From the NCBI RefSeq assembly GCF_046119375.1, contig NW_027362769.1, positions 386,384,001 to 386,448,000 on the forward strand: 64,000 nt of DNA. The letters run 5' to 3'. Below, piece by piece: positions 1,573 to 61,475 of this stretch. Made by a program: the position numbers and the translations under genes. How positions within the stretch are numbered: position 1 is the stretch's first letter; each line of letters begins with the position of its first letter. The notes below the pieces were generated by a model. That model was not told the origin of the DNA. It did no database searches and saw only the letters and a program-made list of their open reading frames with translations. Source of the stretch: Phyllobates terribilis. Lineage: Eukaryota.

Positions 1573-9271
<7,699 letters not shown>

Positions 9272-31100: not shown

Positions 31101-34100
31101 GGAATTTTTGAGTTTTGGTTTTTCTTTTACCCGAAGAGGTGCTGAAAAAAAAAACGGATGTTAAAATAAAAAAGTGCAGGTCATTTCTTGGAAGTGGAAT
31201 CTGATGGAATCCGCTCCAAACTGGGCATTGTCCAATTAAAAGGCTGCAAAAAAAAGGAAAACAAAATACTCCGGAAATGAAAAATTGCTCCAAAAATTCC
31301 ACACAAAAAAAAAAACGATTAAAAAAACGTATAATTTTTGAACACTTCAAAAATCTTCCGTGTGAACATAGCCTTAGAATGCTCTACAACAGTGATCACA
31401 TATCATCCGACACAGAAGAAAATGCACCGATACACTGTAGCAAACCCTATACTTATGCAAGCAAGACACGATCGAGATTGGTTTCGAAGCCCTTACAGTT
31501 ATATGAAAAAGTTTGTGCACCCCTATTAATCTTAAGCTTAATGTTTTATAAAAATTGGTGTTTTTGCAGCAGCTATTTCAGTTTGATATATGTAATAACT
31601 GTTGGACACAGTAATGTTTCTGCCTTGAAATGAGGTTTATTGTACTAACAGAAAATGTGCAATCTGCATTCAAACAAAATTTGACAGGTGCATAAGTATG
31701 GGCACCCGTATCATTTTCTTGTTTTAAATACTCCTACCTACTTTTTACTGACTTACTAAAGCACTTTTTTTTTGTTTTGTAACCTCATTGAGCCTTGAAC
31801 TTCATAGCCTGGTGTATACAATCATGAGAAAAGCTACTTAAAGTGGCCACTTGCAAGTTGTTCTCCTGTTTGAATCTCCTCTGAAGAGTGGCATCATGGG
31901 CTCCTCAAAACAACTGTCAAATGATCTGAAAACAAAGATTATTCAACATAGTTGTTCAGGGGAAGGATACAAAAAGCTGTCTCAGCGATTTAACCTGTCA
32001 GTTTACACTGTGAGGAACATAGTAAGGAAATGGAAGACCACGGGGACAGTTCTTGTTAAGGCCAGAAGTGGCAGGCCAAGAAAAACATCAGAAAGGCAGA
32101 GAAGAAGAATGGTGAGATCAGTCAAGGACAATCCTCAGACCACCTCCAGAGAGCTGCAGCATCAACTTGCTGCAGATGGTGTCACTGTGCATCGGTCAAC
32201 TATACAACGCACTTTGCACAAGGAGAAGCTGTATGGGAGAGTGATGCGAAAGAAGACGTTTCTGCAAGCACGCCACAAACAGAGTCGGCTGAGGTATGCA
32301 AAAGCACATTTGGAGAAGCCAATTTCTTTTTGGAAGAAGGTCCTGTGGACTGATGAAACCAAGATTGAGTTGTTTGGTCATACAAAAAGGCGTTATGCAT
32401 GGCGGCAAAAAAACACAGCATTCCAAGAAAAACACTTGCTACCCACAGTAAAATTTGGTGGAGGTTCCATCATGCTTTGGGGCTGTGTGGCCAATGCCGG
32501 CACCGGGAATCTTGTTAAAGTTGAGGGACACATGGATTCCACTCAGTATCAGCAGATTCTTGACAATAATGTTCAAGAATCAGTGACAAAGTTGAAGTTA
32601 CGCAGGGGATGGATCTTTCAGCAAGACAATGATCCAAAACACCGCTCCAAATCTACTCAGGCATTCATGCAGAGGAACAATTACAATGTTCTGGAATGGC
32701 CATCCCAGTCCCCAGACCTGAATATCATTGAACATCTGTGGGATCATTTGAAGAGGGCTGTCCATGCTCGGCGACCATCAAACTTAACTGAACTGGAATT
32801 GTTTTGTAAAGAGTAATGGTCAAAAATACCTTCATCCAAGATCCAGGAACTCATTAAAAGCTACAGGAAGCGACTAGAGGCCGTTATTTTTGCAAAAGGA
32901 GGATCTACTAAATATTAATGTCACCTTTCTGGTGAGGTGCCCATACTTATGCACCTGTCAAATTTTGTTTGAATGCAGATTGCACATTTTCTGTTTGTAC
33001 AATAAACCTCATTTCAAGGCAGAAACATTACTGTGTCCAACAGTTATTACATATATCAAACTGAAATAGCTGTTGCAAAAACACCAATTTTTATAAAACA
33101 TTAAGCTTAAGATTAATAGGGGTGCCCAAACTTTTTCATATAACTGTAAGCGCAGACACTGTTTCCGTTCACTGATGGCCAGCAGAGATGTTGAAAATGG
33201 GGAAGAATTGAAGCACAAAGCCGACTAGAAAGTTACAGAACTTTTGTGAATATTTTTGGCTGTGGGGTCTTGATAAAATAAAGTGACACGCACTGCGTTT
33301 TATGCTTACGAAGCCGCCCACGAGCAGCAGGCAGAGCAGCGCTGAGGACAACGCCACCACCACGATGATCCAGTATCGCCCCTCCAGGAACAGCTGCCAT
33401 CCTGCCAGGAGGAAACAAGGCACTAGTCAGCGAGCTTCTGGGCTCTCTACTGTCGTATTCCATAAGTATGGTTTATGACAGTCATCAAGTGAGGCCAGGA
33501 AGCGGAGCCGGTCGGCCCCCATGGCCAGCCCTGTACCACACAGCAGCCCCATCCTTCCAGTTCTCTCACCTGTCGCGTTGCCGTGCGGAGGCGACCACTG
33601 ACATGTAGCGTTTAACACCTTTATCGTTCTGTTATTATGGCAGCAGGCACCCCCAGAATCCTTATTAATGATGGAGGTGATGATGAATGATGGCCCCTGC
33701 CTCATCACCTTGACGTTTAGCTGAGCCCTCGCTCTGTGCGCCATCGCAATCACCTCATTACCTCTGGACCACTGCATCTTGGTCCAGTTCATCGGGGCAC
33801 GGCAGGTGATCCACTCCTTCACCACATCATTCAGTTCTGTGGGGAAGAAAGAAGAGTTGTGGGGAGGACTAAGTGCCGGGGCTGAGAATCAGAGACATCA
33901 GCGATGGAAGAAAGAAGAGTTGTGGGGAGGAATAAGTGCCGGGACCAGGAATCTGTGACATCAGCGATGGAAGAAAGAAGAGTTTTGGAGAGGACTAAGT
34001 GCCTGGACCGGAAATCAGAGATTTCACCAATGGAAGAAAGAAGAGTTGTGGGAAGAACTAAATGTCGGGGGCCAGGACATCAGAGACATCAGTGATGGAA

Positions 34101-40448: not shown

Positions 40449-42499
40449 CACTGCTCAAAAAAATAAAGGGAACACTTAAACTACAGAATATAACTCCAAG
40501 TGAATCAAAGTTCAGTGAAATCAAACTGTCCACTTAGGAAGCAACACTGATTGACAATCAATTTCACATGCTGTTGTGCAAATGGAATAGACAATAGATG
40601 GAAATTATTGGCAATTATCAAGACACCCTCAATAAAGGAGAGGCTCTGCAGGTGGGGACCACAGACCACATCTCAGTACCAATGCTTTCTGGCTGATGTT
40701 TTGGTCACTTTTGTATGTTGGTTGTGCTTTCACACTCGTGGTAGCATGAGACGGACTCTACAACCCACAGAAGTTGCTCAGGTAGTGCAGCTCATCCAGG
40801 ATGGCACATCAATGCGAGCTGTGGCAAGAAGGTTTGCTGTGTCTGTCAGCGTAGTGTCCAGAGGCTGGAGGCGCTACCAGGAGACAGGCCAGTACACCAG
40901 GAGACATGGAGGGGGCCGTAGGAGGGCAACAACCCAGCAGCAGGACCGCTACCTCCCCCTTTGTGCAAGGAGGAACAGGAGGAGCACTGCCAGAGCCCTG
41001 CAAAATGACCTCCAGCAGGCCACAAATGTGCATGTGTCTGCACAAACGGTTAGAAACCGACTCCATGAGGGAGGTATGAGGGCCCGACGACCACAGATGG
41101 GGGTTGTGCTCACAGCCCAACACCGTGCAGGACGCTTGGCATTTGCCACAGAACACCAGGATTGGCAAAGTCGCCACTGGCGCCCTGTGCTCTTCACAGA
41201 TGAAAGCAGGTTCACACTGAGCACATGTGACAGATGTGACAGAGTCTGAAGATGTCGTGGAGAGCGATCTGCTGCCTGCAACATCCTTCAGCATGACCGG
41301 TTTGGCAGTGGGTCAGTAATGGTGTGGGGTGGCATTTCTTTGGAGGGCCGCACAGCCCTCCATGTGCTCGCCAGCGGTAGCCTGACTGCCATTAGGTACC
41401 GAGATGAGATGAGATGAGATGTTCCTGCAAGATGAAGGCATTGAAGCTATGGACTGGCCCGCCCGTTCCCCAGACCTGAATCCGGTTGAGCACATCATGT
41501 CTCGCTCCATCCACCAACGTCAAGTTGCACCACAGACTGTCCAGGAGTTGGCGGATGCTTTAGTCCAGGTCTGGAAGGAGATCCCACAGGAGACCATCCG
41601 CAACCTCATCAGGAGCATGCCCAGGCGTTGTAGGGAGGTCATACAGGCACGTGGAGGCCACACACAATACTGAGCCTCATCAGGAGCATGCCCAGGCGTT
41701 GTAGGGAGGTCATACAGGCACGAGGAGGCCACACACAATACTCAGCCTCATCAGGAGCATGCCCAGGCGTTGTAGGGAGGTCATACAGGCACGTGGAGGC
41801 CACACACAATACTCAGCCTCATCAGGAGCATGCCCAGGCATTGTAGGGAGGTCATACAGGCACGTGGAGGCCACACACAATACTGAGCCTCATCAGGAGC
41901 ATGCCCAGGCGTTGTAGGGAGGTCATACAGGCACGAGGAGGCCACACACAATACTCAGCCTCATCAGGAGCATGCCCAGGTGTTGTAGGGAGGTCATACA
42001 GGCACGTGGAGGCCACACACAATACTCAGCCTCATCAGGAGCATGCCCAGGCGTTGTAGGGAGGTCATACAGGCACATGGAGGCCACACACAATACTCAG
42101 CCTCATCAGGAGCATGCCCAGGCGTTGTAGGGAGGTCATACAGGCACGTGGAGGCCACACACAATACTCAGCCTCATCAGGAGCATGCCCAGGCGTTGTA
42201 GGGAGGTCATACAGGCACGTGGAGGCCACACACAATACTGAGACTCATTTTGACTTGTTTTAAGGACATTACATCAAAGTTGGATCAGCCTGTAGTGTGT
42301 TTTTCCCCTTTAATTTTGGGGGTGACTCCAAATCCAGGCCTCCATTGGTTAATAAATGTGATTTCCATTGATGATTTTTGTGTGATTTTATTGTCAGCAC
42401 ATTCAACTTTGTACAGAACAAAGTATTCAATGAGAAGATTTCATTCATTCAGATCTAGGATGTGTTATTTCAGTGTTCCCTTTATTTTTTTGAGCAGTG
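40449..42499 (+). mobile_element. Tc1 element with broken transposase and internal 71-bp tandem expansion
   Basis: TA|cactgctcaaaaaaataaagggaacac ... gtgttccctttatttttttgagcagtg|TA. Transposase from ATG 40746 ([10 protein letters not shown]...FTDESRF), stop at 41247-41249, internal deletion, C-terminal WPARSPDLNPVEH...RGGHTQY*. Confidence 0.92.
41603..42243 (+). repeat. 71-bp tandem repeat, ~9 copies, derived from the transposase 3' end
   Basis: cctcatcaggagcatgcccaggcgttgtagggaggtcatacaggcacgtggaggccacacacaatactgag repeated. Confidence 0.95.
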
Positions 42500-42549: not shown

Positions 42550-45500
42550 TGCCTCCTCCCCCTCTCTGCACAGTGGTCTCCGCACAGCTCACCTCCTCCC
42601 CTCTCTGTATAATGATCTCTGCACAGCTCACCTCCTCCCACTCTCTGTATAATGATCTCTGCACAGGTCACCTCCTCCCACTCTCTTCACAGTGATTTCT
42701 GCACAGCTCACCTCGTCCCACTCTCTGTATAATGATCTCTGCACAGTTCATCTCCTCCCACTCTCCGTATAATGATCTCTGCACAGCTCACTTCCTCCCA
42801 CTCTCTGTATAATGATCTCTGCACAACTCAACTCCTCCCACTCTCTGTATAATGATCTCTGCACAGCTCACCTCCTCCCACTCTCTGTATAATGATCTCT
42901 GCACAGCTCACCTCCTCCCACTCTCTGTATAATGATCTCTGCACAGCTCACCTCCTCCCACTCTCTGTATAATGATATCTGCCCAGCTCACCTCCTCCTA
43001 CTCTCTGTATAATGATCTCTGCACAGCTCACCTCCTCCCACTTTCTGTATAATGATCTCTTTACACCTCACCTCCTCCCCCTCTCTGCACAGCTCATCTC
43101 CTCCCTCTCTCTGTATAATGATCTCTGCACAGCTCACTTCCTCCCACTCTCTGTATAATGATCTCTGCACAGCTCACCTCTTCCTCTGTAAACATTGATA
43201 TCCGCACAGCTCACCTCCTCCCACTCTCTGCACAATAATCTGTGCACAGCTCACCTCCTCCCCCTCTCTGTATAATGATCTCTGCACAGCTCACCTCCTC
43301 CCCTCTCTGTATAATGATCTCTGCACTGCTCCCCTCCTCCTCCTCTGTATAATGATCTCTGCACAGCTCACCTCCCCCTCTCTGTATAATGATCTCTGCA
43401 CTGCTCCCCTCCTCCTCCTGTGTATAATGAGCTCTGCACTGCTCCCCTCCTCCTCCTCTGTATAATGATCTCTGCACAGCTCACCTCCCCCCCTCTCTGT
43501 ATAATGATCTCTGCACAGCTCACCTCCTCCTCCTCTGTATAATGATCTCTGCACAGCTCACCTCCTCCCCCTCTCTGTATAATGATCTCTGCACACCTCA
43601 CCTCCTCCCCCTCTCTGCACAGTGATCTCTGCAGAGCTCATCTCCTCCCCCTCTCTGTATAATGATCTCTGCATAGCTCACCTCTTCCTCTGTAAACATT
43701 GACATCCACACAGCTCACCTCCTCCCACTCTCTGCACAATAATCTGTGCACAGCTCACCTCCTCCCCCTCTCTGTATAATGATCTCTGCACGGCTCACCT
43801 CCTCCCCTCTCTGTATAATGATCTCTGCACAGCTCACCTCCTCCCCCTCTCTGTATAATGATCTCTGCACTGCTCCCCTCCTCCTCCTCTGTATAATGAT
43901 CTCTGCACAGCTCACCTCCCCCTCTCTGTATAATGATCTCTGCATAGCTCACCTCTTCCTCTGTAAACATTGACATCCACACAGCTCACCTCCTCCCACT
44001 CTCTGCACAATAATCTGTGTACAGCTCACCTCCTCCCCCTCTCTGTATAATGATCTCTGCACGGCTCACCTCCTCCCCTCTCTGTATAATGATCTCTGCA
44101 CAGCTCACCTCCTCCCCCTCTCTGTATAATGATCTCTGCACTGCTCCCCTCCTCCTCCTCTGTATAATGATCTCTGCACAGCTCACCTCCCCCTCTCTGT
44201 ATAATGATCTCTGCACTGCTCCCCTCCTCCTCCTCTGTATAATGAGATCTGCACTGCTCCCATCCTCCTCCTCTGTATAATGATCTCTGCACAGCTCACC
44301 TCCCCCCCGCTCTGTATAATGATCTCTGCACAGCTCACCTCCTCCTCCTCTGTATAATGATCTCTGCACAGCTCACCTCCTCCCCCTCTCTGTATAATGA
44401 TCTCTGCACAGCTCACCTCCTCCCCTCTCTGTATAATGATCTCTGCACAGCTCATCTCCTCCTCTGTATAATGATCTCTGCACAGCTCACCTCCTCCCCC
44501 TCTCTGTATAATGATCTCTGCACAGCTCACCTCCTCCCCCTCTCTGTATAATGATCTCTGCACAGCTCACCTCCTCCTCTGTATAATGATCTCTGCACAG
44601 CTCACCTCCTCCCCCTCTCTGTATAATGATCTCTGCACAGCTCACCTCCTCCCCCTCTCTGTATAATGATCTCTGCACAGCTCACCTCCTCCTCCTCCTC
44701 TGTATAATGATCTCGGCACAGCTCACCTCCTCCCCCTCTCTGTATAATGATCTCTGCACAGCTCACCTCCTCCTCCTCTGTATAATGATCTCGGCACAGC
44801 TCACTTCCTCCTCCTCTGTATAATGATCTCTGCACAGCTCACCTCCTCCTCTGTATAATGATCTCTGCACAGCTCACCTCCTCCCCCTCTCTGTATAATG
44901 ATCTCTGCACTGCTCCCCTCCTCCTCCTCTGTATAATGATCTCTGCACAGCTCACCTCCCCCTCTCTGTATAATGATCTCTGCACTGCTCCCCTCCTCCT
45001 CCTCTGTATAATGAGATCTGCACTGCTCCCATCCTCCTCCTCTGTATAATGATCTCTGCACAGCTCACCTCCCCCCCGCTCTGTACAATGATCTCTGCAC
45101 AGCTCACCTCCTCCTCCTCTGTATAATGATCTCTGCACAGCTCACCTCCTCCCCCTCTCTGTATAATGATCTCTGCACAGCTCACCTCCTCCCCTCTCTG
45201 TATAATGATCTCTGCACAGCTCACCTCCTCCTCTGTATAATGATCTCTGCACAGCTCACCTCCTCCCCCTCTCTGTATAATGATCTCTGCACAGCTCACC
45301 TCCTCCCCCTCTCTGTATAATGATCTCTGCACAGCTCACCTCCTCCTCTGTATAATGATCTCTGCACAGCTCACCTCCTCCCCCTCTCTGTATAATGATC
45401 TCTGCACAGCTCACCTCCTCCCCCTCTCTGTATAATGATCTCTGCACAGCTCACCTCCTCCTCCTCTGTATAATGATCTCGGCACAGCTCACCTCCTCCC

Positions 45501-45830
45501 CCTCTCTGTATAATGATCTCTGCACAGCTCAACTCCTCCTCCTCTGTATAATGATCTCGGCACAGCTCACTTCCTCCTCCTCTGTATAATGATCTCTGCA
45601 CAGCTCACCTCCTCCTCTGTATAATGATCTCTGCACAGCTCACCTCCTCCCCCTTTCTGTATAATGATCTCTGCACAGCTCACTTCCTCCTCCTCTGTAT
45701 AATGATCTCTGCACAGCTCACTTCCTCCTCCTTTGTATAATGATCTCTGCACAGCTCACCTCCTCCTCTGTATAATGATCTCTGCACAGCTTACCTCCTC
45801 CCCCTCTCTGTATAATGATCTCTGCACAGA
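42550..45830. repeat. ~36-40-bp pyrimidine-rich minisatellite with 271-bp and 769-bp higher-order blocks
   Basis: ctctgtataatgatctctgcacagctcacctcctcccc repeated; near-identical ORFs at 44183/44952 and 43715/43986 offsets. Confidence 0.95.
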
Positions 45831-46489
45831 CATGCCCACAACACTATCCCACTGAAGTCAGTGAACATTTCCAGACTATGCACCTAGACTTGTTTGCTGG
45901 GACATTATTATTCTCTCGCTGATGTTTGTATACTTTTGTATTTTTCCTCCGCACATTATTATAGTTTCGATGACTTTACTACTATTTTTGTGATTTGTTT
46001 GAGGATTTTTTTTTATCTTTTTTCATTGTTTTACCCTTCACACTTTACCTTTTTGGCTTGTAAAAGTGATGTGATTCTTATGTGCTATTTTTCGTCGGTT
46101 TATTTTATTCAATTCTTTTTGATTGTTTTTCTTTCATGTTTATTTTTTAATGTTTTATTAGGAAGTAAAAGCGCCCTCCCGTAATGCTGGTGTGTAAGAC
46201 CACTAAAAATAAAACAGAAGGAAGAGGAGGCCGCGACGGGCGAACAACAAGAAGCGGCTTTTTTCTTCAATGAACTAAACCACCTCAGACGATCCCGGTT
46301 TATTCTTCTTCTTTTTACGACCGCAGTAGAAGCTGATAATGATAAATATTCCTTTTATGGAGACAATTACATATGGATGTGAATTTCTGACCTTTTTAAT
46401 TTTTACATTTTAATTCGAAATAAAACCAACCTTCTTTACAGCAGTCAAAGCTCAAATTTTGTGATACAGAATTCCAAAACATCTGCATT

Positions 46490-49400
46490 GAGTCACCACT
46501 AGGAGGAGCTCCCTGTATCCAGAAATAGATGATAATGTTCTGTCTGCAGCCACCACTAGGGGGAGCTCCCTGTATACAGAAATAGATGATAATGTTCTGT
46601 CTGCAGCCACCACTAGGGGAAGCTCCCTGTATACAAAAATAGATGATAAGATTCTGTCTGCAGCCACCGCTAGGGGAAGCTCCCTGTATATAGAAATAGA
46701 TGATAATGTTCTGCCTGCAGCAACCACTAGGGGGAGCTCCCTGTATACAGAAATAGATGATAATGTTCTGTCTGCAGCCACCACTAGGGGGACATCCCTG
46801 TATACAGAAATAGATGATAATGTTCTGTCTGCAGCCACCACTAGGGGGAGCTCCCTGTATACAGAAAGAGATGATAATGTTCTGTCTGCAGCCACCACTA
46901 GGGGGAGCTCCCTGTATACAGAGACACATGATAAGATTCTCTCTGCAGCCACCACTAGAGGGAGCTCCCTGTACACAGAGATACATGATAAGATTCTGTC
47001 TGCAGCCACCACTAGGGGAAGCTCCTGGTATACAGAGATGCACGATAAGATTCTGTCTGCAACCACAACTAGGGGGAGCTCCCTGTATACAGAGATACAT
47101 GATAAGATCCTGTCTGCAACCACCACTAGGGGAGCTCACTGTATACAGAGATACATGATAAGATCCTGTCTGCAGCCACCACTAGGGGGAGCTCCCTGTA
47201 TACAGAGATACATGATAAGATCCTGTCTGCAACCACCACTAGGGGAGCTCATTGTATACAGAGATACATGATAAGATCCTGTCTGCAGCCACCACTAGGG
47301 GGAGCTCTCTGTATACAGAGATACATCATAAGATCCTGTCTGCAGCCACCACTAGGGGGAGCGCCCTGTATACAGAGATAAATGAGAAGATCCTGTCTGC
47401 AGCCACCACTAGGGGGAGCGCCCTGTATACAGAGATAAATGAGAAGATCCTGTCTGCAGCCACCACTAGGGGGAGTGCCCTGTATAGAGAGATACATGAT
47501 AAGATTCTGTCTGCAGCCACCACTAGGGGGAGCAACCTGTATACAGAGATACATGATAAGATTCTGCCTGCTGCCACCACTAGGGGGGAGCTCCCTGTAT
47601 ACAGAGATACATGATAAGACCCTGTCTGCAGTCACCACTAGGGGGAGCTCCCTGTATACAGAGATACATGATAACATTCTGTCTGCAGCCACCACTAGGG
47701 GGAGCTCCCTGTATACAGAGATACATGATAAGATCCTGTCTGCAACCACCACTAGGGGAGCTCATTGTATACAGAGATAAATGATAAGATCCTGTATGCA
47801 GCCACCACTAGGGGGAGCACCCTGTATACAGAGATACATGAGAAGATCCTGTCTGCAGCCACCACTAGGGGGAGTGCCCTGTATACAGAGATGCATGATA
47901 AGATCCTGTCTACAGTCACCACTAGGGAGAGCTCACTGTATAGAGATACATGATAAGATGCTGTCTGCAACCACTCTAGGGGGAGCACCCTGTATACAGA
48001 GATACATGAGAAGATCCTGTCTGCAGCCACCACTAGGGGGAGTGCCCTGTATACAAAGATACATGATAAGATCCTGTCTACAGCCACCACTAGGGGCAGC
48101 TCACTGTATACTGAGATACATGATAAGATTCTGTCTGCAGCCACTAATAGGGGGAGCTCCCTCTATACAGAGATACATGAGAAGATCCTGTCTGCAGCCA
48201 CCACTAGGGGGAGTGCCCTGTATACAGAGATACATGATAAGATCCTGTCTGTAGCCACCACTAGGGGGGAGCTCGCTGTATACGAGATACATGATAAGAA
48301 CATGTCTGCAGTCATCACTAGGGGGAGCTCACTGTATACAGAGATACGCGGTAAGATCCGGTCTGTAGTCACCACTAGAGGGAGCTCTCTGTATACAGAG
48401 ATACATGATAAGATTCTGTCTACAGCCACCACTAGGGGGAGCTCCCTGTATACAGAGATACATAATAAGATTCGATCTGCAGTCACCACTAGGGGGAGCT
48501 CCCTGTATACAGAGATAAATGATAAGATTCTGTCTACAGCCACCACTAGGGGGAGCTCCCTGTATACAGAGATACATAATAAGATTCGATCTGCAGTCAC
48601 CACTAGGGGGAGCTCCCTGTATACAGAGATACATGATAAGATTCTGCCTGCTGCCACCACTAGGGGGGAGCTCCCTGTATACAGAGATACATGATAAGAC
48701 CCTGTCTGCAGCCACCACTAGGGGGAGCTCCCTGTATACAGAGATACATGATAACATTCTGTCTGCAGCCACCACTAGGGGGAGCTCCTTGTATACAGAG
48801 ACACATGGTAAGACCCTGTCTGCAGCCAACACTAGGGGGAGCTCCCTTTATACAGAGATACATGATATGATCCTGTCTGCAGCCACCACTAGGGGGAGCT
48901 CCCTATATACAGAGATACATGATAAGATCCGGTCTGCAGTCACCACTAGAGGGAACTCCGTGTATACAGAGATACATTATAAGATTCTGTCTGCATTCAC
49001 CACTAGGGGGAGCTCCCTGTATACAGATACATGATAAGATCCTGTCTGCAGACACCACTAGGGGGAGCTCCCTGTATACAGAGATACATAATAAGATCCT
49101 GTCTGCAGTCACCACTAGGGGGAGCTCCGTGTATACAGAGATACATTATAAGATTCTGTCTGCAGCCACCACTAGGGGGAGCTCCCTGTATACAGAGATA
49201 CATGATAAGATCCTGTCTGCAGTCACCACTAGGGGGAGCTCCCTGTATACAGAGATACATGATAAGATTCTGTCTGCAGTCACCACTAGGGGGAGCTCCC
49301 TGTATACAGAGATACATGATAATATTCTGTCTGCAGCCACCACTAGGGGGAGCTCCCTGTATACAGAGATACATGATAAGATTCTGTCTGCAGTCACCTC

Positions 49401-49880
49401 TAGGGGGAGCTCCCTGTATACAGAGATATATGATAAGATTCTGTCTGCAGCCACCACTAGGGGGAGCTCCCTGTATACAGAGATAAATGATAAGATTCTG
49501 TCTGCAGCCACCACTAGGGTGAGCTCCCTGTATACAGAGATACATGATAATATCCTGTCTGCAGTCACCACTAGGGGGAGCTCCCTGTATACAGTGATAC
49601 ATGATAAGATTCTGTCTGCATTACCACTAGGGGGAGCTCCCTGTATACAGAGATAAATGATAAGATTCTGTCTGCGGTCACCACTAGGGGGAGCTCCCTG
49701 TATACAGAGATGCATGATAAGATCCTGCCGGCAGCCACCACTAGGGGGAGCTCCCTATATACAGAGATACATGATAATATTCTGTCTGCAGCCACCACTA
49801 GGGGGAGCTCCCTGTATACAGAGATACATGATAAGATCCTGTCTGCAGCCACCACTAGGGGGCGCTCCCTGTATACAGAG
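46490..49880 (+). repeat. 57-bp minisatellite, ~60 copies, each carrying a CTCF-like motif
   Basis: gccaccactagggggagctccctgtatacagagatacatgataagattctgtctgca repeated (19-aa period in the ORFs); the last copy has CCACTAGGGGGCGC (49852-49865). Confidence 0.95.
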
Positions 49881-50239
49881 ATACATGATAAGGTTCTGCA
49901 TTAACCCTGTGTGTCCCAGGTTGGAGCTGGTTTCTGTAGAGTTTAGAGAAGACTGTTCGCTGGGCTGGGGGCAGTGGGGTGTGGAGGGTCTTCCTCTCGC
50001 CCGTCGGTCACACCCAGCTGCATCCTGTTTGTCGATCTCACACAGGGAGGATGTGGACTTTTCTTGTCGGTTATTGTAGGAAACACCATAAAACAGACCG
50101 TGCACGAAGCCATATATATATATATAATGACAGTACCATTATATCAGCACTGTACTAATAGTACAGAGAGATAAGCGGCACTGGATTTATCTGGCAGCTG
50201 CTTATCTCCATAAATAAAAGGGTGAGCCTTGCAAAAATG

Positions 50240-50790
50240 TGCAGCCTCCCCTCCTGCAGCCTCCCCTCTCTGCAGCCTCCCCTCTCTGCAGCCTCCCCTC
50301 CTGCAGCCTCCCCTCTCTGCAGCCTCCCTTCCTGCAGCCTCCCCTCCTGCAGCCTCCCTTCCTGCAGCCTCCCCTCTCTGCAGCCTCCCTTCCTGCAGCC
50401 TCCCTTCCTGCAGCCTCCCCTCCTGCAGCCTCCCCTCTCTGCAGCCTCCCCTCCTGCAGCCTCCCCTCTCTGCAGCCTCCCTTCCTGCAGCCTCCCCTCC
50501 TGCAGCCTCCCTTCCTGCAGCCTCCCCTCTCTGCAGCCTCCCCTCCTGCAGCCTCCCCTCTCTGCAGCCTCCCTTCCTGCAGCCTCCCCTCCTGCAGCCT
50601 CCCTTCCTGCAGCCTCCCCTCTCTGCAGCCTCCCTTCCTGCAGCCTCCCTTCCTGCAGCCTCCCCTCCTGCAGCCTCCCCTCCTGCAGCCTCCCCTCTCT
50701 GCAGCCTCCCCTCTCTGCAGCCTCCCTTCCTGCAGCCTCCCTTCCTGCAGCCTCCCTTCCTGCAGCCTCCCCTCTCTGCAGCCTCCCCTC
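50240..50790. repeat. 15/17-bp minisatellite (gcagcctcccctcct / gcagcctcccctctct)
   Basis: Direct periodicity. Confidence 0.95.
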
Positions 50791-50849
50791 TGATGCTGCA
50801 CAATCTTGATAAGATGCTTTATAGAACTGCTGCCTGGAGCTCATATAAA

Positions 50850-51139
50850 GGACTGGTCACCTCTGCCGGAAATTGCCGAACTGTCTGAGCTGAGGCGCCG
50901 GAAAGTCACGAGCAGCCTCCAAGACAATAAGAGACCAGAGGAGCCTGAGCGTTGCCGGAAATTACCGAAGTCACTGGCGTCCTCACAGCCGAGCGCTGAC
51001 GGAGATTCCCGAGCGGATACGGAAACGTGTCCCATGCGGATGCGGATTTGTTCGGGAGGAAAGTTGGAGGTTTGGGAAGGAAAGTAGAAGTGGAGGCGCC
51101 CCCTGAATCTCAGTGCAAGCGGAGAAGGCTGCAGGCAAG
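50850..51139 (+). promoter_or_regulatory. Putative rabep2 promoter and non-coding first exon
   Basis: CpG-rich with three CCGGAA ETS-type sites; strong donor GCAAG|gtaagt at 51139/51140; no ATG-initiated frame reaches the donor in the phase required. Confidence 0.5.
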
Positions 51140-51544
51140 GTAAGTGCAGGGTCTGCCTGTGTTATGTGCAGCAGAGCTGCCGGTACAATGTGTTATGTGC
51201 ACGTGATAGCGAATGCACCTGCATGCTGGGATTTGTAGTCCCTCTCCTCTAGGCAGGAAAGTCTCTGTGCAGGAATTAAATCACAATAATATATAAAGGT
51301 AATACCCAGGCAAGAGCGGCGATCCCAGGAGCTGACGCTCTAATGATGCCAGCAGTGCAGGGGTTAATGTATCTAATCCTGCATGGGGGTGGGGTTTGCG
51401 GATTAATTTTGCATAATTAATTATTACAATCGCACAAACTGAAGATGCTCCAAGGACAAGATTGCGGGAAAATCTGATCGTAAATGCGCAAATATTACCG
51501 CAGATTTATTTGTGTCTTTGCTGCTAAAATGAAAGATAAAAGCC

Positions 51545-51960
51545 GCGACCCCGGGAGGGGGGCGGTCACCAGCGGGACCCCGGGAGGGGGGCGGTCACCA
51601 GCGGGACCCCGGGAGGGGGGCGGTCACCAGCGGGACCCCGGGAGGGGGGCGGTCACCAGCGGGCTCCCGGGGGGGGCGGTCACCAGCGGGATCCCGGGGG
51701 GGGGGGGCCTCACAAGCGGGCTCCCGGGAGGGGCGGTCACCAGCAGGCTCCTGGGGCGGGGGGGGCGGTCACCAGCGGGCTCCCGGGGGGGGGGGCGGTC
51801 ACCAGCGGGCTCCCGGGGGGGGGGGGCGTCACCAGCGGGCTCCCGGGGGGCGGGGGGGCGTCACCAGCGGGATCCCGGGGGGGGCGTCACCAGCGGGATC
51901 CCGGGGGGGGCGTCACCGGCGGGATCCCGGGGGGGGCGTCACCAGCGGGATCCCGGGGCG
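51545..51960. repeat. GC-rich ~30-35-bp minisatellite with G runs
   Basis: ggtcaccagcgggaccccgggagggggc repeated. Confidence 0.9.
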
Positions 51961-52535
51961 TCACAAGCAGGCTCCTTTTTTATGTCTTTATTTTTCTATA
52001 TATTTTTTTTTTTTTTGTCTTTGCTGTAGTTTTGCACTAATTTCTTAAAGAAAAAAAAAAAATGCGCATGGGGTTCATGAAAATCCAAAAACAAATGTAT
52101 TTTTAGGATTTTTTGGGAGAAGAGGACACTTGTGCAAAAATTCTGCCACTTTTTAAAAAAAAAAAAAAAAAGTATAAAAATAATGAATCGGCCGCAAATA
52201 TATGAAAAATCAGAACCGCAGCCAAAATGGCGAATAAGGAAGAAAACGGGCGAACAAGTATAAAAACAGGAAACCTAAAATGCCATGATGGGTCGGGCCC
52301 AGAGCTGTCACACGTGATAACTGGAGCCTGGGTGAGCTAGATGTTGGCGTTCAGTCATGACGTGTCGTCAGCGCTGCAGCCAGTCATGGTCGGCAGTGGT
52401 CACGTGACCTCCCGGCTGGATACAGTGGAGCAGAGGCACGCGGCCGGCCTCTCCATTACCCTTGATATTTGGTTTCCGTTCCCATTACTCTGTCCTATTA
52501 TCCAATCTCATTCTCCAGGAAACCTCTGTGTGTCG

Positions 52536-55045
52536 ATGTCAGAGTCAGAAGATGGCAGCTTTGGGCAGGACCCCCTCACGTCCTCTCTTGAGGGCCCCTG
52601 TGATGACCACGAGCTCCTGGCCACGACCGAGGCCTTTGCACGAGGCTTCGATTGCGTCTCCATTTCCTCTTTTCCGGGGGAGAGGCTGATCCAGGGCCAG
52701 GAGGACACGGCCTCCATTATCTCTACAGCCACCCTGGTCCCCGAGTGCATTTACATCCCTCCGGCGGGCTACCAGCTGCTGTCCGAGCAGGAGGTAACGG
52801 GGGCCAGGCTTCTGCCAGCCCCTCTGGTTCATTGTGTCTCTGGGTAGAAAAAAAAAAAAAGCTCATCTAAAATAAAAATATGAATCTATGCAAAAATCCT
52901 ATATAGATCTGTTTCCATAGCAACAGACTACAAACAAGCCCTGCGTAGTCAGATAGTGCCGCCACATTCCCACCCATGCGTGCCCTCCTTCACTACTTTC
53001 TTTAGCAAGACTTATGATTATATTTTTTGGATGGAAGTCATGTGACTGATCAGACTACACATGGCTTGTTTGTAGTCTGTTACTAAGGCAACACATCTGT
53101 ATACAGCTTCTCTACAGCCCTACATCCTTCCCTGGCAACAGACTACGAGCAAACCCTGCGTAGTTGGATCCTGCAGTCCAAAAAAAACTGGGCAAGAAGG
53201 AAGGAACGTGACAGGTCAGACTACACAGGACTTGTTTGTAGTCTGTTACCAAGGAAACGCATAGATCTGTATGGAATCTGTATAAAGATCTGTGTTGCCT
53301 TAGTAACAGACTACAAACAAGCCCTGTGTAGTCACATTTCTTCCTTAGTATTTTGGAAAGACGTATGACTGCAGGATCTGACTACAGTGTTTGCTCGTAG
53401 TCTGTTACCATGGAGACGTATAGGAGCTGTATGCAGAAAGACAATAGTTTGTGATGTTTCTATAAGTTGCTTCACTTTACAGATGCGTTAAGGCAATAAA
53501 TACAAGAGGCGTGTGGAGTGGTAGTGATCATGGGGGGCACCAGTAGTAACATTTCTGTGTTTTGGGGCAGTGGGTGCAGCAGAGAGCGGCACTGCAGAGC
53601 ACCGCGGAGCGGCTGGAGAAGGTGACGCAGGAGAAGGAGGCGCTGCAGGACGCCCTGAGGTGCAGCTCGGAGGACTGTGCTAACCAGGCAAGTCATTGTA
53701 TAGATGTATGGCGCATGTATATGTGTCACAGTATGGACTCATCGGCTGCCCGGTCTCCTGCAGGTGAAGCAGTTACTGGAGCAGATAAAGAGCTCCGAGG
53801 AAATCCTGCAAGGTCTGCAGAAAACCCTGTCTGACACCCAGCAGAAGACCTCACAGAAAATGGTGAGATCCGCTCCAGGCTGTGGACGTTTTATACCTCA
53901 CTCTGACCGCTCTGGTCTCCTCCTCGCCTAACCTGATGCTTTACGCTAGCTGCCTGGCATTGAGCCGACCATCCGGATCGGAGCATTTCTAGGTTTCAAT
54001 GTCCGATAATCAGGATCTATTCTGATAATTGAGCAGTGGAACAACAGGGATCACCACTAATGTCCCCTCCTTGCATCCTGGTTTATGCTTTTTATTTTTC
54101 TTCTGTGTTTTCCATCCAGGCCGCCCTGACGGCCTCCTTCAGCCGCATGTGTCAGGAGGTGAACTGTCTGGATGATGAGAACGAGAAGCTGAGGACACTA
54201 AGTGTAGAAGCACCCCCTGCTGGGCAGAACGCGCAGCTCTCATCCCCGCAGGTATTACAGTGTGCACAGCGTCAGTCAGCAGCTGCTAAAGCCTGCGAGA
54301 TATAAGGTCCAGGCACAGACTCTCCTGGCGTAAATATGGCGCCACGGGTGCCCTAAACTACACTGATTGGGCGTATTACTCAGTGTTTTTGTAGTATCTT
54401 ATGCTGTTGTTTTCCAGAGAGCGGCGCAGCACAGACAGGAGCGGTTGTGTATAGAGATCGTCTCTCTGCAAGAGGAGCTGAAAGCTGAACAAGTGGCAAA
54501 GCAAGAGGTGGAGGAGCAGCTGAGGAGGGCAGCGGACACCCACACCGAGGAGAGGGGTGAATGGGCTCAGTCTGTGGGGTGGGCACCCGTCTATCCCTGT
54601 AGGCCGCACATGGACTGACCAGTCACTGCCCATATTGGATGTCGCCGTGATGCCCAGATCAGCTCTGCCAGTGACTGGGGTTGTTTTTTCCCTGGTGCTC
54701 CCAACCCCCCGGATGCCCCATACATGCTGACAAACCCAATTTTGTTAGGACATTGCCACAACCGTCCCACGGCCATGTGCGTTTTGGTGGCTTTCCATGG
54801 CATTTTGGGAACCATCCTGGAGTGGGGCTTAAATGACCCAAATTTTGCCCCAGTCATAATAGAAAATGGTAAAATAAATAAAATGGATCCTGCCTCCCCA
54901 GAAGTCGTTTTTTGTGGCCTCATGGAGTTAAATATTTACCCAAAAATGTATTAAATAAATAAATAAAATCCGGCATTAAGTAAAATAATTAGATCCGTCG
55001 CTCGAGCCACCCCGAAATCTTATGACTAGTTTTAGTCCAAATGTA

Positions 55046-57358: not shown

Positions 57359-57828
57359 GTCACGGGACTGCGGAGACTATGGGATGAGGCCGCACGCTGT
57401 ATACCGTGTATATAGGGTGCAATATATGCTCTAATAACCGTGTCCTGCCACCAGGGTGCGCATTCTCTAATATTAATGATCCGCCTGTGGGAAAACTGGA
57501 ATGAAACCCATAGAGAGCGGAGGATTATGTGACTACTAACGACCACTAACTGCTGTTACACTTTATTAAAGGCTCTTTTATATCACATGTGTCTGTAATG
57601 CATAAATCAAACACTGTAACATCCCTTTAAGCTGCAGGTTTCTTGTGACTATTGAAATGTAATTTTTATTTTTATTTTTTTCTGTGTGAATCTCCACCAC
57701 AATGCTTTCCTCAGGGAAAATGTATCAACTGTAACACGGTCAAAAGTCGCTCAAAGGTTTCAACTACAGGAAAACATCAAGGTCTTGGCACCTGGCGTGT
57801 ATTGGTAGTGGTGTAGCTCAGACACTTA

Positions 57829-60800
57829 GGGTTGGCCTAGGGTAGAGGTGGTAGTAGGGTTGGGTTAGGATTAGGGCTAGGGTAGAGGTGGTACTAGGGT
57901 TGGGTTAGGATTAGGGCTAGGGTAGAGGTGGTACTAGGGTTGGGTTAGGATTACGGCTAGGGTAGAGGTGGTACTAGGGTTGGGTTAGGATTAGGGCTAG
58001 GGTAGAGGTGGTACTAGGGTTGGATTAGGGCTAGGGTAGAGGTGCTACTAGGTTTGGATTAGGGCTAGGGTAGAGGTGGTACTAGGGTTGGATTAGGGCT
58101 AGGGTAGAGGTGGTACTAGGGTTGGATTAGGATTAGAGGTGGTACTAGGGTTGGATTAGGATTAGAGCTAGGGTAGAGGTGGTACTAGGGTTGGATTAGG
58201 ATTAGAGCTAGGGTAGAGGTGGTACTAGGGTTGGGATAGGATTAGATCTAGGGTAGAGGTGGTACTAGGGTTGGGATAGGATTAGAGCTAGGGTAGAGGT
58301 GGTACTAGGGTTGGATTAGGGCTAGGGTAGAGGTGGTACTAGGGTTTGATTAGGATTAGAGGTGGTACTAGGGTTGGATTAGGGCTAGAGCTAGGGTAGA
58401 GGTGGTACTAGGGTTGGATTAGGGCTAGAGCTAGGGTAGAGGTGGTACTAGGGTTGGATTAGGGCTAGGGTAGAGGCGGTACTAGGGTTGGATTAGGATT
58501 AGAGCTAGGGTAGAGGTGGTACGAGGGTTGGATTAGGGCTAGGGTAGAGGTGGTACTAGGGTTGGATTAGGATTAGAGGTGGTACTAGGGTTGGATTAGG
58601 ATTAGAGCTAGGGTAGAGGTATGAGGGTTGGATTAGGGCTAGGGTAGAGGTGGTACTAGGGTTGGATTAGGATTAGAGGTGGTACTAGGGTTGGATTAGG
58701 ATTAGAGGTGGTACTAGGGTTGGATTAGGGCTAGAGCTAGGGTAGAGGTGGTACTAGGGTTGGATTAGGATTAGGGCTAGGGTAGAGGCGGTACTAGGGT
58801 TGGATTAGGATTAGAGCTAGGGTAGAGGTGGTACGAGGGTTGGATTAGGATTAGGGCTAGGGTAGAGGCGGTACTAGGGTTGGATTAGGATTAGAGCTAG
58901 GGTAGAGGTGGTACGAGGGTTGGATTAGGGCTAGGGTAGAGGTGGTACTAGGGTTGGATTAGGATTAGAGGTGGTACTAGGGTTGGATTAGGATTAGAGC
59001 TAGGGTAGAGGTGGTACGAGGGTTGGATTAGGGCTAGGGTAGAGGTGGTACTAGGGTTGGATTAGGATTAGAGGTGGTACTAGGGTTGGATTAGGATTAG
59101 AGCTAGGGTAGAGGTGGTACTAGGGTTGGATTAGGGCTAGAGCTAGGGTAGAGGTGGTACTAGGGTTGGATTAGGATTAGGGCTAGGGTAGAGGCGGTAC
59201 TACGGTTGGATTAGGATTAGAGCTAGGGTAGAGGTGGTACGAGGGTTGGATTAGGGCTAGGGTAGAGGTGGTACTAGGATTGGATTAGGGCTAGAGCTAG
59301 GGTAGAGGTGGTACTAGGATTGGATTAGGGCTAGAGCTAGGGTAGAGGTGGTACTAGGGTTGGATTAGGATTAGAGCTAGGGTAGAGGTGGTACTAGGGT
59401 TGGATTAGGGCTAGGGTAGAGGTGGTACTAGGATTGGATTAGGATTAGAGCTAGGGTAGAGGTGGTACTAGGGTTGGATTAGGATTAGAGCTAGGGTAGA
59501 GGTGGTACTAGGGTTGGATTAGGATTAGAGCTAGGGTAGAGGTGGTACTAGGGTTGGATTAGGGCTAGGGTAGAGGTGGTACTAGGGTTGGATTAGGGCT
59601 AGGGTAGAGGTGGTACTAGGGTTGGATTAGGGCTAGAGCTAGGGTAGAGGTGGTACTAGGGTTGGATTAGGGCTAGGGTAGAGGCGGTACTAGGGTTGGA
59701 TTAGGATTAGAGCTAGGGTAGAGGTGGTACGAGGGTTGGATTAGGGCTAGGGTAGAGGTGGTACTAGGGTTGGATTAGGATTAGAGGTGGTACTAGGGTT
59801 GGATTAGGATTAGAGCTAGGGTAGAGGTGGTACGAGGGTTGGATTAGGGCTAGGGTAGAGGTGGTACTAGGGTTGGATTAGGATTAGAGGTGGTACTAGG
59901 GTTGGATTAGGATTAGAGCTAGGGTAGAGGTGGTACTAGGGTTGGATTAGGGCTAGAGCTAGGGTAGAGGTGGTACTAGGGTTGGATTAGGGCTAGGGTA
60001 GAGGCGGTACTAGGGTTGGATTAGGATTAGAGCTAGGGTAGAGGTGGTACTAGGGTTGGATTAGGGCTAGGGTAGAGGCGGTAGTAGGGTTGGATTAGGA
60101 TTAGAGCTAGGGTAGAGGTGGTACGAGGGTTGGATTAGGGCTAGGGTAGAGGTGGTACTAGGGTTGGATTAGGATTAGAGGTGGTACTAGGGTTGGATTA
60201 GGATTAGAGCTAGGGTAGAGGTGGTACGAGGGTTGGATTAGGGCTAGGGTAGAGGTGGTACTAGGGTTGGATTAGGATTAGAGGTGGTACTAGGGTTGGA
60301 TTAGGATTAGAGCTAGGGTAGAGGTGGTACTAGGGTTGGATTAGGGCTAGAGCTAGGGTAGAGGTGGTACTAGGGTTGGATTAGGATTAGGGCTAGGGTA
60401 GAGGCGGTACTAGGGTTGGATTAGGATTAGAGCTAGGGTAGAGGTGGTACGAGGGTTGGATTAGGGCTAGGGTAGAGGTGGTACTAGGATTGGATTAGGG
60501 CTAGAGCTAGGGTAGAGGTGGTACTAGGATTGGATTAGGGCTAGAGCTAGGGTAGAGGTGGTACTAGGGTTGGATTAGGATTAGGGCTAGGGTAGAGGCG
60601 GTACTAGGGTTGGATTAGGATTAGAGCTAGGGTAGAGGTGGTACGAGGGTTGGATTAGGGCTAGGGTAGAGGTGGTACTAGGATTGGATTAGGGCTAGAG
60701 CTAGGGTAGAGGTGGTACTAGGGTTGGATTAGGATTAGAGCTAGGGTAGAGGTGGTACTAGGGTTGGATTAGGATTAGAGCTAGGGTAGAGGTGGTACTA

Positions 60801-61475
60801 GGGTTGGATTAGGGCTAGGGTAGAGGTGGTACTAGGGTTGGATTAGGATTAGAGCTAGGGTAGAGGTGGTACTAGGGTTGGATTAGGATTAGAGCTAGGG
60901 TAGAGGTGGTACTAGGGTTGGATTAGGATTAGAGCTAGGGTAGAGGTGGTACTAGGGTTGGATTAGGGCTAGGGTAGAGGTGGTACTAGGGTTGGATTAG
61001 GGCTAGGGTAGAGGTGGTACTAGGGTTGGATTAGGGCTAGGGTAGAGGTGGTACTAGGGTTGGATTAGGGCTAGGGTAGAGGTGGTACTAGGGTTGGATT
61101 AGGGCTAGGGTAGAGGTGGTACTAGGGTTGGATTAGGGCTAGGGTAGAGGCGGTACTAGGGTTGGATTAGGATTAGAGCTAGGGTAGAGGTGGTACGAGG
61201 GTTGGATTAGGGCTAGGGTAGAGGTGGTACTAGGATTGGATTAGGGCTAGAGCTAGGGTAGAGGTGGTACTAGGGTTGGATTAGGATTAGAGCTAGGGTA
61301 GAGGTGGTACTAGGGTTGGATTAGGATTAGAGCTAGGGTAGAGGTGGTACTAGGGTTGGATTAGGGCTAGGGTAGAGGTGGTACTAGGGTTGGATTAGGA
61401 TTAGAGCTAGGGTAGAGGTGGTACTAGGGTTGGATTAGGATTAGAGCTAGGGTAGAGGTGGTACTAGGGTTGGGG
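57829..61475 (+). repeat. Telomere-like G-rich satellite (34/40-bp units containing TTAGGG, CTAGGG, TTAGGA, TTAGAG)
   Basis: ctagggtagaggtggtactagggttggattaggg and variants repeated over ~3.6 kb. Confidence 0.95.

What the first reader, a model, noticed from the sequence alone, without database searches (positions are those of the whole stretch)
46490..49880. Tandem array of ~60 same-orientation CTCF-like motifs between the divergent cd19 and rabep2 promoters
Seen: each 57-bp unit carries GCCACCACTAGGGGGAGCTC, which matches the CTCF core CCASYAGRKGGCRS at all but one position (A for C); the last unit is a perfect CCACTAGGGGGCGC. The A variant removes the CpG, so binding could be methylation-insensitive. 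The array lies ~1 kb upstream of the putative rabep2 promoter and ~6.5 kb upstream of B-cell-specific cd19. Established: clustered CTCF sites in tandem repeats (e.g. DXZ4, Firre) form strong boundaries or loop anchors. Inference: a satellite-built super-insulator separating a lineage-restricted gene from a housekeeping gene, with copy number as a possible tuning variable. If the unit is dispersed genome-wide, it may be a repeat-driven way of seeding boundaries in frogs.
Basis: partly seen in the sequence, partly recalled or inferred. Interest (0 to 1): 0.75.

Follow-up and report, generated by a model that had tools for sequence, protein, structure and literature searches.

The report
CTCF-motif satellite array beside rabep2 promoter
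A 3.4-kb run of 60 copies of a 57-letter repeat, each carrying a strong same-direction match to the docking site of the genome-folding protein CTCF, lies just upstream of a frog rabep2 gene. The repeat is one local block of a very abundant satellite shared by several frog species, so it is not shown to be a purpose-built insulator.

Summary
TRF finds a 57-bp array of 59.9 units at 46494-49898. The last unit is a perfect core.

- **Gene context.** A spliced RNA contig puts rabep2 exon 1 at or before 50761 to 51139. The array therefore ends 0.2-0.9 kb upstream of that promoter. The cd19 identity was not verified.
- **Abundance.** The monomer is not local. DNA runs of three other frog organisms laid 6,700-27,000 contigs on the array. 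Summed depth was 10^3-10^5 times the single-copy level. About 96% of those contigs lie wholly within it, and they spell the same A-variant motif.
- **Local setting.** Tandem repeats cover 41% of the window.
- **Constraint.** Within the array the motif is no better conserved than the rest of the unit.

Best reading: this is one locus of an abundant satellite family whose monomer carries a CTCF-type site. It grew in place by unequal exchange, and co-orientation follows automatically from tandem copying. CTCF binding and insulation are plausible but untested. The scan had already noted several other CTCF-motif minisatellites in this genome. I file it as a new member of a known kind, of moderate interest.

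The parts
46494..49898 (+). 57-bp satellite array of 59.9 units. Each unit carries a CTCF-type motif on the + strand, consensus CCACCACTAGGGGGAGCTC.
   Evidence: TRF; matrix scan; pattern count; unit table
46494..46892 (+). First seven units form a 5' sub-family (…GAAATAGATGATAATGTT…) distinct from the main body of the array.
   Evidence: Unit table; best-partner analysis
47803..48312 (+). Stretch with a local three-unit (171-bp) higher-order pattern. Units 20-21 and 39-40 are also near-identical, a 19-unit long-range duplication.
   Evidence: Identity at lag 3 is 0.899 against 0.869 at lags 1-2; units 20/39 are 100% identical
49849..49867 (+). Last unit's motif CCACCACTAGGGGGCGCTC. It is the only unit that meets the strict core, and its motif contains a CpG.
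   Evidence: 21.5 bits, p 2.6e-8
50240..50790 (+). 15-bp minisatellite (TGCAGCCTCCCCTCC). Its 3' end is inside rabep2 exon 1. The RNA sample has one extra unit.
   Evidence: TRF; RNA contig with a 15-nt insertion behind 50775
50761..51139 (+). rabep2 exon 1, minimum extent. It is non-coding: an in-frame stop lies at 51085-51087.
   Evidence: Spliced contig X12 record 13, joint 51137>52517 with GT..AG; sequence
51140..52518 (+). rabep2 intron 1. It is CpG-island-like and holds a 29-bp CpG-rich minisatellite at 51550-51957.
52519..52793 (+). rabep2 exon 2, with the ATG at 52536 (MSESEDG…).
42552..45829 (+). Neighbouring 40-bp minisatellite of 85 units. It has no CTCF motif and shares only a 10-11-bp word with the 57-mer.
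   Evidence: TRF; alignment against shuffles
40551..41246 (+). Tc1/mariner transposase remnant between the Ig-type gene and the arrays.
   Evidence: Pfam HTH_Tnp_Tc3_2, E 7.6e-23

Best explanation
The array is one local block of a very abundant, tandemly organised 57-bp satellite family shared by several related frog species.

**How it got here.** It sits in a promoter-proximal interval saturated with minisatellites. It grew there by unequal exchange or replication slippage, as duplications of 3 and of 19 units show.

**The motif.** The high-scoring, CpG-free CTCF-type motif belongs to the family's monomer. The 55-60 co-oriented copies follow automatically from tandem duplication and are not a device built to separate cd19 from rabep2.

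**What is shown.** The array, the motif scores, the abundance and tandem state of the family in other species, and the position 0.2-0.9 kb upstream of the rabep2 start.

**What is inferred.** CTCF could bind such units wherever chromatin is open. Forward motifs would then stall cohesin arriving from the rabep2 side. Any such effect here would be a by-product of the satellite, and it is untested.
For: **Family abundance.**
- 27,099, 18,632 and 6,734 contigs of organisms B, C and E lie on the array at 88% identity or better.
- Summed depth on the array is 2e3-4.7e5, against about 8 on the single-copy rabep2 exon and 0 on the flank 49901-50100.
- Only about 4-15% of those contigs lie partly on the stretch. 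The share that runs on into unlike sequence is 0.
- One organism E contig spans 2.6 units.
- Loose ends in all three organisms spell CACTAGGGGGAGCTC.
- The 15-bp and 29-bp arrays beside it do not show such depth, which serves as an internal control.

**Cross-species divergence.** The rabep2 exon contigs of C and E are only 88-90% identical to the window, so these are different species.

**Local setting.** Tandem repeats cover 41% of the window, with 12 arrays of 500 bp or more. Only this array carries the motif.

**No constraint on the motif.** Variability is 0.052 in the motif against 0.075 elsewhere (P 0.14). Observed substitutions are not milder than random ones (P 0.16).

**Growth by duplication.** A three-unit higher-order pattern and a 19-unit duplication are present.

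**Published background.** Frog minisatellites expand in recombination-rich regions, and frogs lack PRDM9 (PMC10794172).

**Earlier scan notes.** They list several other CTCF-motif arrays of about 56-57 bp in this genome. These are unchecked.
Against: - **Motif strength.** At p of about 3e-7 per unit, the chance that a given satellite monomer holds such a site is only about 3e-5. A top-abundance satellite carrying one may not be accidental.
- **Conservation across species.** A third of organism B contigs are 99% or more identical to units here, although a coding exon differs by about 10%. That could reflect constraint, though satellites often behave this way.
- **Location.** The array abuts an active CpG-island promoter, where chromatin is likely to be open.
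- **CpG-free motif.** DNA methylation could not block binding directly.
- **Limits of the depth figures.** The tool warns that depth summed over contigs is not a copy number.
Confidence: 0.6

Rival explanations
1. Working multi-CTCF boundary at this locus. CTCF occupies many of the 55 forward sites in vivo. Its N-terminus faces the 3' side of the motif (established for convergent loop anchors), so the array would stall cohesin extruding from the rabep2 side. It would anchor loops to reverse sites downstream (for example 54208 or 63437) and shield the B-cell gene from the rabep2 CpG-island promoter.
For: - 55 of 60 units reach p<=1e-4 and 33 reach p<=1e-6, all on the + strand.
- The motif has no CpG.
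- The array ends 0.2-0.9 kb from a transcribed CpG-island promoter.
- Strong reverse motifs lie downstream at 54208 and 63437.
- CTCF and convergent motifs organise domains in Xenopus (PMC8270788).
- Tandem CTCF arrays act as anchors in mammals: DXZ4 (PMC3491370) and gamma-satellite.
Against: - There are no occupancy or contact data.
- The family numbers roughly 10^5-10^6 units per genome. That is more than the tens of thousands of sites usually occupied in vertebrate cells (my knowledge), so most copies cannot all be bound.
- The motif shows no extra conservation within the array.
- A 57-bp spacing leaves little room for both CTCF and nucleosomes.
- The other minisatellites in the same interval have no motif.
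Confidence: 0.25
2. Genome-wide seeding. The satellite family as a whole spreads clusters of CTCF sites, preferentially next to promoters. It would reshape domain borders in these giant genomes, as SINE B2 waves did in rodents but with arrays in place of single sites.
For: - The family is abundant, tandem and carries the same motif in at least three other organisms.
- Earlier scan notes place other CTCF-motif arrays of about 56-57 bp at KDM5A/CCDC77, NOL7, TERF2, a CpG island and the uricase gene. These are unchecked, and I could not confirm they are the same monomer.
Against: - Those notes are biased towards genes, and I did not compare their sequences.
- The look-up by sequence was blank.
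- No mobile-element hallmarks were found around the array.
- No binding data exist.
Confidence: 0.1
3. The motif is irrelevant and structure drives the repeat. The two 10-bp palindromes in the unit (GGGAGCTCCC and CTGTATACAG) would form hairpins that favour slippage and expansion, or would bind some dimeric factor other than CTCF.
For: Both palindromes are in the consensus unit. A two-unit DNA fold gives -16.7 kcal/mol, z -1.78.
Against: The fold is not clearly better than shuffles: 6 of 200 do as well. The palindromes do not explain the good match of the non-palindromic part CCACCACTAGG to the CTCF matrix.
Confidence: 0.05

Closest known systems
DXZ4 / FIRRE-type CTCF-binding tandem repeats of mammals (PMC3491370)
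   Same: A tandem array in which every unit carries a CTCF site in one orientation. Such arrays are proposed or shown to act as strong loop anchors.
   Different: Those are macrosatellites with kilobase units at one or a few loci, and CTCF binding is demonstrated. Here the unit is 57 bp, the family is dispersed and hugely abundant, and binding is untested.
Human gamma-satellite and other CTCF-motif-rich satellites (bioRxiv 10.64898/2026.07.18.739380)
   Same: A satellite family whose monomers are enriched in CTCF motifs, conserved across related species and proposed to act as a barrier.
   Different: Gamma-satellite is GC-rich and pericentromeric, with monomers of about 215 bp and methylation-dependent sites. 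The frog monomer is 48% GC, free of CpG and, at least here, lies in gene-rich DNA next to a promoter.
SINE B2-type waves of transposon-borne CTCF sites (from my own knowledge: Bourque 2008, Schmidt 2012)
   Same: A lineage-specific repeat that carries a CTCF motif in its consensus and multiplies it across the genome.
   Different: Those are single sites on retrotransposons. Here the sites are in tandem arrays, and no transposon hallmarks were found.
Frog recombination-driven minisatellites of extended subtelomeres (PMC10794172)
   Same: A dense mix of unrelated minisatellites in GC-richer, gene-bearing DNA. They expand by unequal crossing-over, and some arise from pieces of mobile elements.
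   Different: That paper does not describe a CTCF-motif monomer. I could not test whether this window is subtelomeric.
Helitron minisatellites as 'mechanical' insulators in C. elegans (bioRxiv 10.64898/2026.08.08.743475)
   Same: The idea that dispersed minisatellites from selfish DNA can become chromatin boundaries.
   Different: That mechanism rests on 10-bp helical periodicity of the DNA and involves no insulator protein. Here the candidate mechanism is a protein-binding motif.

Membership tests
CTCF-binding tandem-repeat boundary (DXZ4/FIRRE type) | Tandem array with a CTCF motif in most units, co-oriented | tested here: met
   55 of 60 units at p<=1e-4, all on the + strand
CTCF-binding tandem-repeat boundary (DXZ4/FIRRE type) | CTCF (and cohesin) occupancy in vivo | not testable with these tools
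   No ChIP or CUT&RUN data could be reached. All runs found were DNA or RNA contigs.
CTCF-binding tandem-repeat boundary (DXZ4/FIRRE type) | Boundary or loop anchor in contact maps | not testable with these tools
   No Hi-C data available
CTCF-binding tandem-repeat boundary (DXZ4/FIRRE type) | Macrosatellite confined to one or a few loci | tested here: not met
   The unit is 57 bp. Thousands of contigs and a 10^3-10^5-fold depth excess in three other organisms.
Abundant tandem satellite / minisatellite family | Head-to-tail units with higher-order structure | tested here: met
   TRF: 59.9 units, 0% indels. Three-unit pattern and 19-unit duplication.
Abundant tandem satellite / minisatellite family | High copy number beyond this locus, also tandem elsewhere | tested here: met
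   6,734-27,099 contigs laid, share running on into unlike sequence 0, one contig spanning 2.6 units.
Abundant tandem satellite / minisatellite family | Shared by related species | tested here: met
   Organisms B, C and E hold it. Their rabep2 exon is 88-90% identical to the window.
Transposon-borne CTCF sites (SINE B2 type) | Motif in the consensus of a dispersed repeat | tested here: met
   Loose ends spell CACTAGGGGGAGCTC in three organisms
Transposon-borne CTCF sites (SINE B2 type) | The repeat is a mobile element (terminal repeats, target duplication, tRNA-type head) | tested here: inconclusive
   - The flanks are unique within the window.
- No Rfam or tRNA match.
- Likeness to the 480-bp element at 11792-12262 / 63137-63613 beyond the motif is weak (P 0.23 and 0.014).
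Frog extended-subtelomere minisatellite landscape | High density of unrelated minisatellites | tested here: met
   41% of the window, 12 arrays of 500 bp or more
Frog extended-subtelomere minisatellite landscape | Position within the terminal tens of Mb of a chromosome | not testable with these tools
   The window's chromosomal position is not given

The most novel reading that the evidence does not exclude
A satellite of 10^5-10^6 copies, conserved across poison-frog species, carries a CpG-free and therefore methylation-proof high-affinity CTCF site in every 57-bp monomer. It has planted multi-site CTCF arrays next to many promoters. Repeat expansion, not single-site turnover, would then set domain borders in these giant genomes. 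This array would be the directional border of the rabep2 domain.
Probability: 0.12. Interest if true: 0.75.

Novelty: new member of a known kind. Interest (0 to 1): 0.45.

Why it matters
If CTCF really binds this monomer, poison frogs would offer a natural case of boundaries built and resized by satellite expansion. Arrays of different copy number at many promoters would make a ready-made dose series for loop-extrusion blocking. It would also raise the question of how a cell copes with far more strong CTCF motifs than it has CTCF to fill. If CTCF does not bind, the case is a caution: in genomes that are 40% minisatellite, striking arrays of transcription-factor motifs arise from repeat dynamics alone.

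Tried and rejected
- **Common origin with the neighbouring 40-bp array.** Only a 10-11-bp shared word; 0-4 of 200 shuffles do as well. Too weak to claim.
- **Origin from the 480-bp dispersed element with a perfect CTCF motif.** The alignment is co-linear, but with the motif held fixed P is 0.23 and 0.014. Inconclusive.
- **Other copies of the unit in the window.** None.
- **Purifying selection on the motif within the array.** Not significant in two tests.
- **Hairpin-driven explanation.** Fold z is only -1.78.
- **Finding other copies in public data.**
  - An exact 30-mer scan of metagenome contigs found 0.
  - A protein word search with an array ORF scored nothing.
  - An exact-product look-up of the array/flank ORF found nothing.
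  - The look-up of earlier findings by sequence was blank.
- **tRNA/SINE or known RNA origin.** No Rfam or tRNA hit.
- **Verifying cd19.** Pfam gave only a weak Ig hit, and the PDB sequence search found nothing.
- **Transcription of the array.** RNA-run contigs do lie on it. With a family this abundant, and intronic background at depth 3-7, they may come from other loci or from DNA carry-over. I draw no conclusion.
- **Poison-frog genome papers.** They do not mention satellites or CTCF.
Full report

Yes. Tandem Repeats Finder reports one array at 46494-49898 with period 57, 59.9 copies, 90% matches and no indels. The sequence reads as described.

The quoted 20-mer GCCACCACTAGGGGGAGCTC is exact in 16 units, within one mismatch in 35 and within two in 51. 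Every match is on the + strand and inside the array, and 100 dinucleotide shuffles gave none.

The strict core CCASYAGRKGGCRS is met only by the last unit (49852). Two unrelated sites, 11957 (+) and 63439 (-), also meet it. With A allowed at core position 12, 36 units match.

Its column sums and its consensus TGGCCACCAGGGGGCGCTA look right, but it is not a downloaded file.
- 55 of 60 units reach p<=1e-4, 43 reach p<=1e-5 and 33 reach p<=1e-6, all on the + strand.
- The consensus unit scores 18.7-19.4 of a possible 25.9 bits, and the last unit scores 21.5.
- The A at the position that is usually C costs about 2.8 bits.

The array is nearly free of CpG, with 17 seen against 199 expected.

The 60 motifs are not 60 independent events. 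They are one motif copied. By my arithmetic, the chance that a 57-bp monomer holds a site this good on either strand is about 3e-5.

**2. Surroundings**

The window is saturated with minisatellites. About 26 separate arrays cover 41% of it, and 12 are 500 bp or longer. None of the others has a CTCF-type monomer.

Downstream on the + strand lies a rabaptin-type gene. Rab5-bind (PF09311) matches three ORFs co-linearly, with best E 1.9e-11.

An RNA contig of the window's species (run X12, 697 nt, depth 104) joins 50761-51137 to 52517-52793 with GT..AG ends. Reading the sequence gives this structure:
- Exon 1 ends at 51139.
- Intron 1 is 51140-52518.
- Exon 2 starts at 52519.
- The first ATG after an in-frame stop (51085-51087) is at 52536 (MSESEDG…).

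Exon 1 reaches back at least to 50761, inside a 15-bp minisatellite. RNA depth is 0 at 49901-50100. The rabep2 start site therefore lies 0.2-0.9 kb beyond the end of the 57-bp array. The region 50800-52800 has CpG observed/expected of 0.63-0.98, which is island-like.

On the other side there are Ig-like ORFs on the - strand (weak Pfam ig, E 0.005) and a signal-peptide-like ORF near 40060. A PDB sequence search gave nothing. I could not verify that this gene is cd19. That name rests on synteny recalled from the human map, where RABEP2 and CD19 are head-to-head neighbours.

A Tc1/mariner remnant (40551-41246) and an 85-unit 40-bp array (42552-45829) lie between that gene and the 57-bp array.

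**3. The new fact: the monomer is a very abundant satellite shared between species**

The run search found the stretch in DNA runs of the window's organism and, at about 0.2 of the sampled words, in four other organisms. I laid contigs of one RNA run of the same organism and of DNA runs of organisms B, C and E on 46901-52900 at 88% identity or better. The single-copy rabep2 exon contigs of C and E differ from the window by 10-11%, so these are other species.

| Measure | Organism B | Organism C | Organism E |
|---|---|---|---|
| Contigs laid on the stretch | 27,099 | 18,632 | 6,734 |
| Contigs lying only partly on it | 1,090 | 1,171 | 1,021 |
| Share running on into unlike sequence | 0 | 0 | 0 |

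- Summed word depth per bin on the array is 2e3-4.7e5. It is about 8 on the single-copy exon and 0 on the unique flank 49901-50100.
- The neighbouring 15-bp and 29-bp arrays show nothing comparable, which serves as an internal control.
- One organism E contig spans 2.6 units.
- Loose ends in all three organisms spell CACTAGGGGGAGCTC with full agreement. The family therefore carries the same A-variant motif and is itself tandem.
- Other loose ends show a sub-family with a 5-bp insertion (…ATTCTGGCTAC|CTGCAGCC…).

Dividing summed depth by single-copy depth gives roughly 15-57 Mb, or 10^5-10^6 units, per genome. This is my arithmetic. The tool warns that summed contig depth is not a copy number, so it is an order of magnitude only.

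Earlier notes of this scan list several other CTCF-motif arrays in this genome whose length divided by motif count gives 56-57 bp. They name KDM5A/CCDC77, TERF2, uricase and a site beside a CpG island. They also call the genome a golden poison frog. I could not compare those sequences or check the species name.

**4. Is the motif under constraint here?**

Not detectably.
- Across the 60 aligned units, mean variability is 0.052 in the 19-bp motif and 0.075 elsewhere (Mann-Whitney P 0.14; 14-bp core P 0.08).
- The 25 kinds of substitution seen in the motif are not significantly milder for the matrix than random ones matched for transitions and transversions (P 0.16).

The array shows ordinary satellite dynamics. 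It has a distinct sub-family in the first seven units, a local three-unit (171-bp) pattern and a 19-unit long-range duplication.

**5. Origin**

The origin is unknown.
- The flanks are unique in the window.
- There is no tRNA or Rfam match.
- The 40-bp neighbour shares only a 10-11-bp word.
- A 480-bp dispersed element has two copies, 11792-12262 and 63137-63613, inverted and 82% identical. It carries a perfect CTCF motif similar to the unit's. Likeness beyond the motif is weak (P 0.23 and 0.014).

**6. Most likely explanation**

This is one locus of an abundant satellite family. It expanded in place by unequal exchange in a recombination-prone, promoter-proximal interval. That fits what is published for frogs: minisatellites track recombination, and PRDM9 is absent (PMC10794172). 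The motif belongs to the family, and co-orientation is automatic.

If CTCF binds, the geometry is clear from established loop-extrusion rules. Forward motifs stall cohesin coming from the 3' side. The array would then be a left anchor for the rabep2 side, with candidate partners at the reverse motifs 54208 and 63437. Xenopus work shows CTCF and convergent motifs organise frog domains (PMC8270788), so applying the mammalian matrix is reasonable.

With 10^5-10^6 motif copies per genome, most cannot be occupied at once. Occupancy would be decided by chromatin state. This array's position next to an active CpG island makes it one of the more likely copies to be open. All of that is inference.

**7. 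Comparison with what is known**

Tandem arrays of CTCF sites are known as anchors in DXZ4 (PMC3491370). CTCF-motif-rich satellites are known in primates: gamma-satellite, rDNA and some alpha-satellite arrays (bioRxiv 10.64898/2026.07.18.739380). Repeat-borne spread of CTCF sites is known from SINE B2 (my knowledge).

The frog family combines these traits as a dispersed, abundant minisatellite with one strong CpG-free site per 57 bp. It fails the macrosatellite, single-locus criterion of the DXZ4 type. The two poison-frog genome papers I checked do not mention satellites or CTCF.

**8. Verdict**

- The super-insulator reading is untested and is weakened as a locus-specific design.
- The scan had already found this kind of array on other DNA of the same genome.
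- I file it as a new member of a known kind, with interest 0.45.

Exons were searched one by one and never joined.

Noticed in passing
window 11792-12262 (+) and 63137-63613 (-): Two copies, 82% identical, of a dispersed element of about 480 bp with internal palindromes. Each carries a near-perfect CTCF motif (CGACCACTAGGTGGCGCTC, p 9e-9; CCACCACTAGGTGGCGCTC, p 4e-8). This may be a transposon-borne CTCF site family.
   Followed up: partly
window 50761-51139, 52519-52793: The rabep2 transcript seen has a non-coding first exon that begins inside a 15-bp minisatellite, and its ATG is at 52536. The N-terminal coiled-coil of about 200 residues that human RABEP2 has (from memory) is not encoded between the Ig-type gene and this exon. 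This may be a short isoform, or the gene may be truncated in this lineage.
   Followed up: partly
window 50775: The RNA sample carries one extra 15-bp unit (CTGCAGCCTCCCCTC) in the 5'UTR minisatellite. That is a length difference between individuals inside an exon.
   Followed up: no
window 1-64000: Tandem repeats cover 41% of the window, with about 26 arrays and 12 of 500 bp or more. These include a 4.6-kb GGCTG-rich array at 1646-6279 and a 3.6-kb telomere-like (TTAGGG-related) 40-bp array at 57826-61473.
   Followed up: partly
window 46396-50105: The 57-bp unit is 19 codons long and mostly free of stops. The array therefore yields ORFs of 100-247 aa on both strands, which could be miscalled as genes.
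   Followed up: no
window 51901-52100: This bin shows high summed depth in all four runs (336-8,095). Another multi-copy or low-complexity element lies in rabep2 intron 1. A 34-bp match to the edge of the 480-bp element is at 52151-52183.
   Followed up: no
window 40551-41246 and 31842-32813 (+): Tc1/mariner transposase remnants: HTH_Tnp_Tc3_2 at E 7.6e-23 and 1.7e-20. The second also has DDE_3 and a Sleeping-Beauty-type HTH.
   Followed up: yes
window 46901-49900, RNA run X12: 642 RNA-run contigs lie on the satellite, with summed depth up to 1.8e4 against 104 for rabep2 exons. Either satellite-containing RNA is abundant, or this is carry-over of genomic DNA or pre-mRNA. The two cannot be told apart from contigs.
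   Followed up: no
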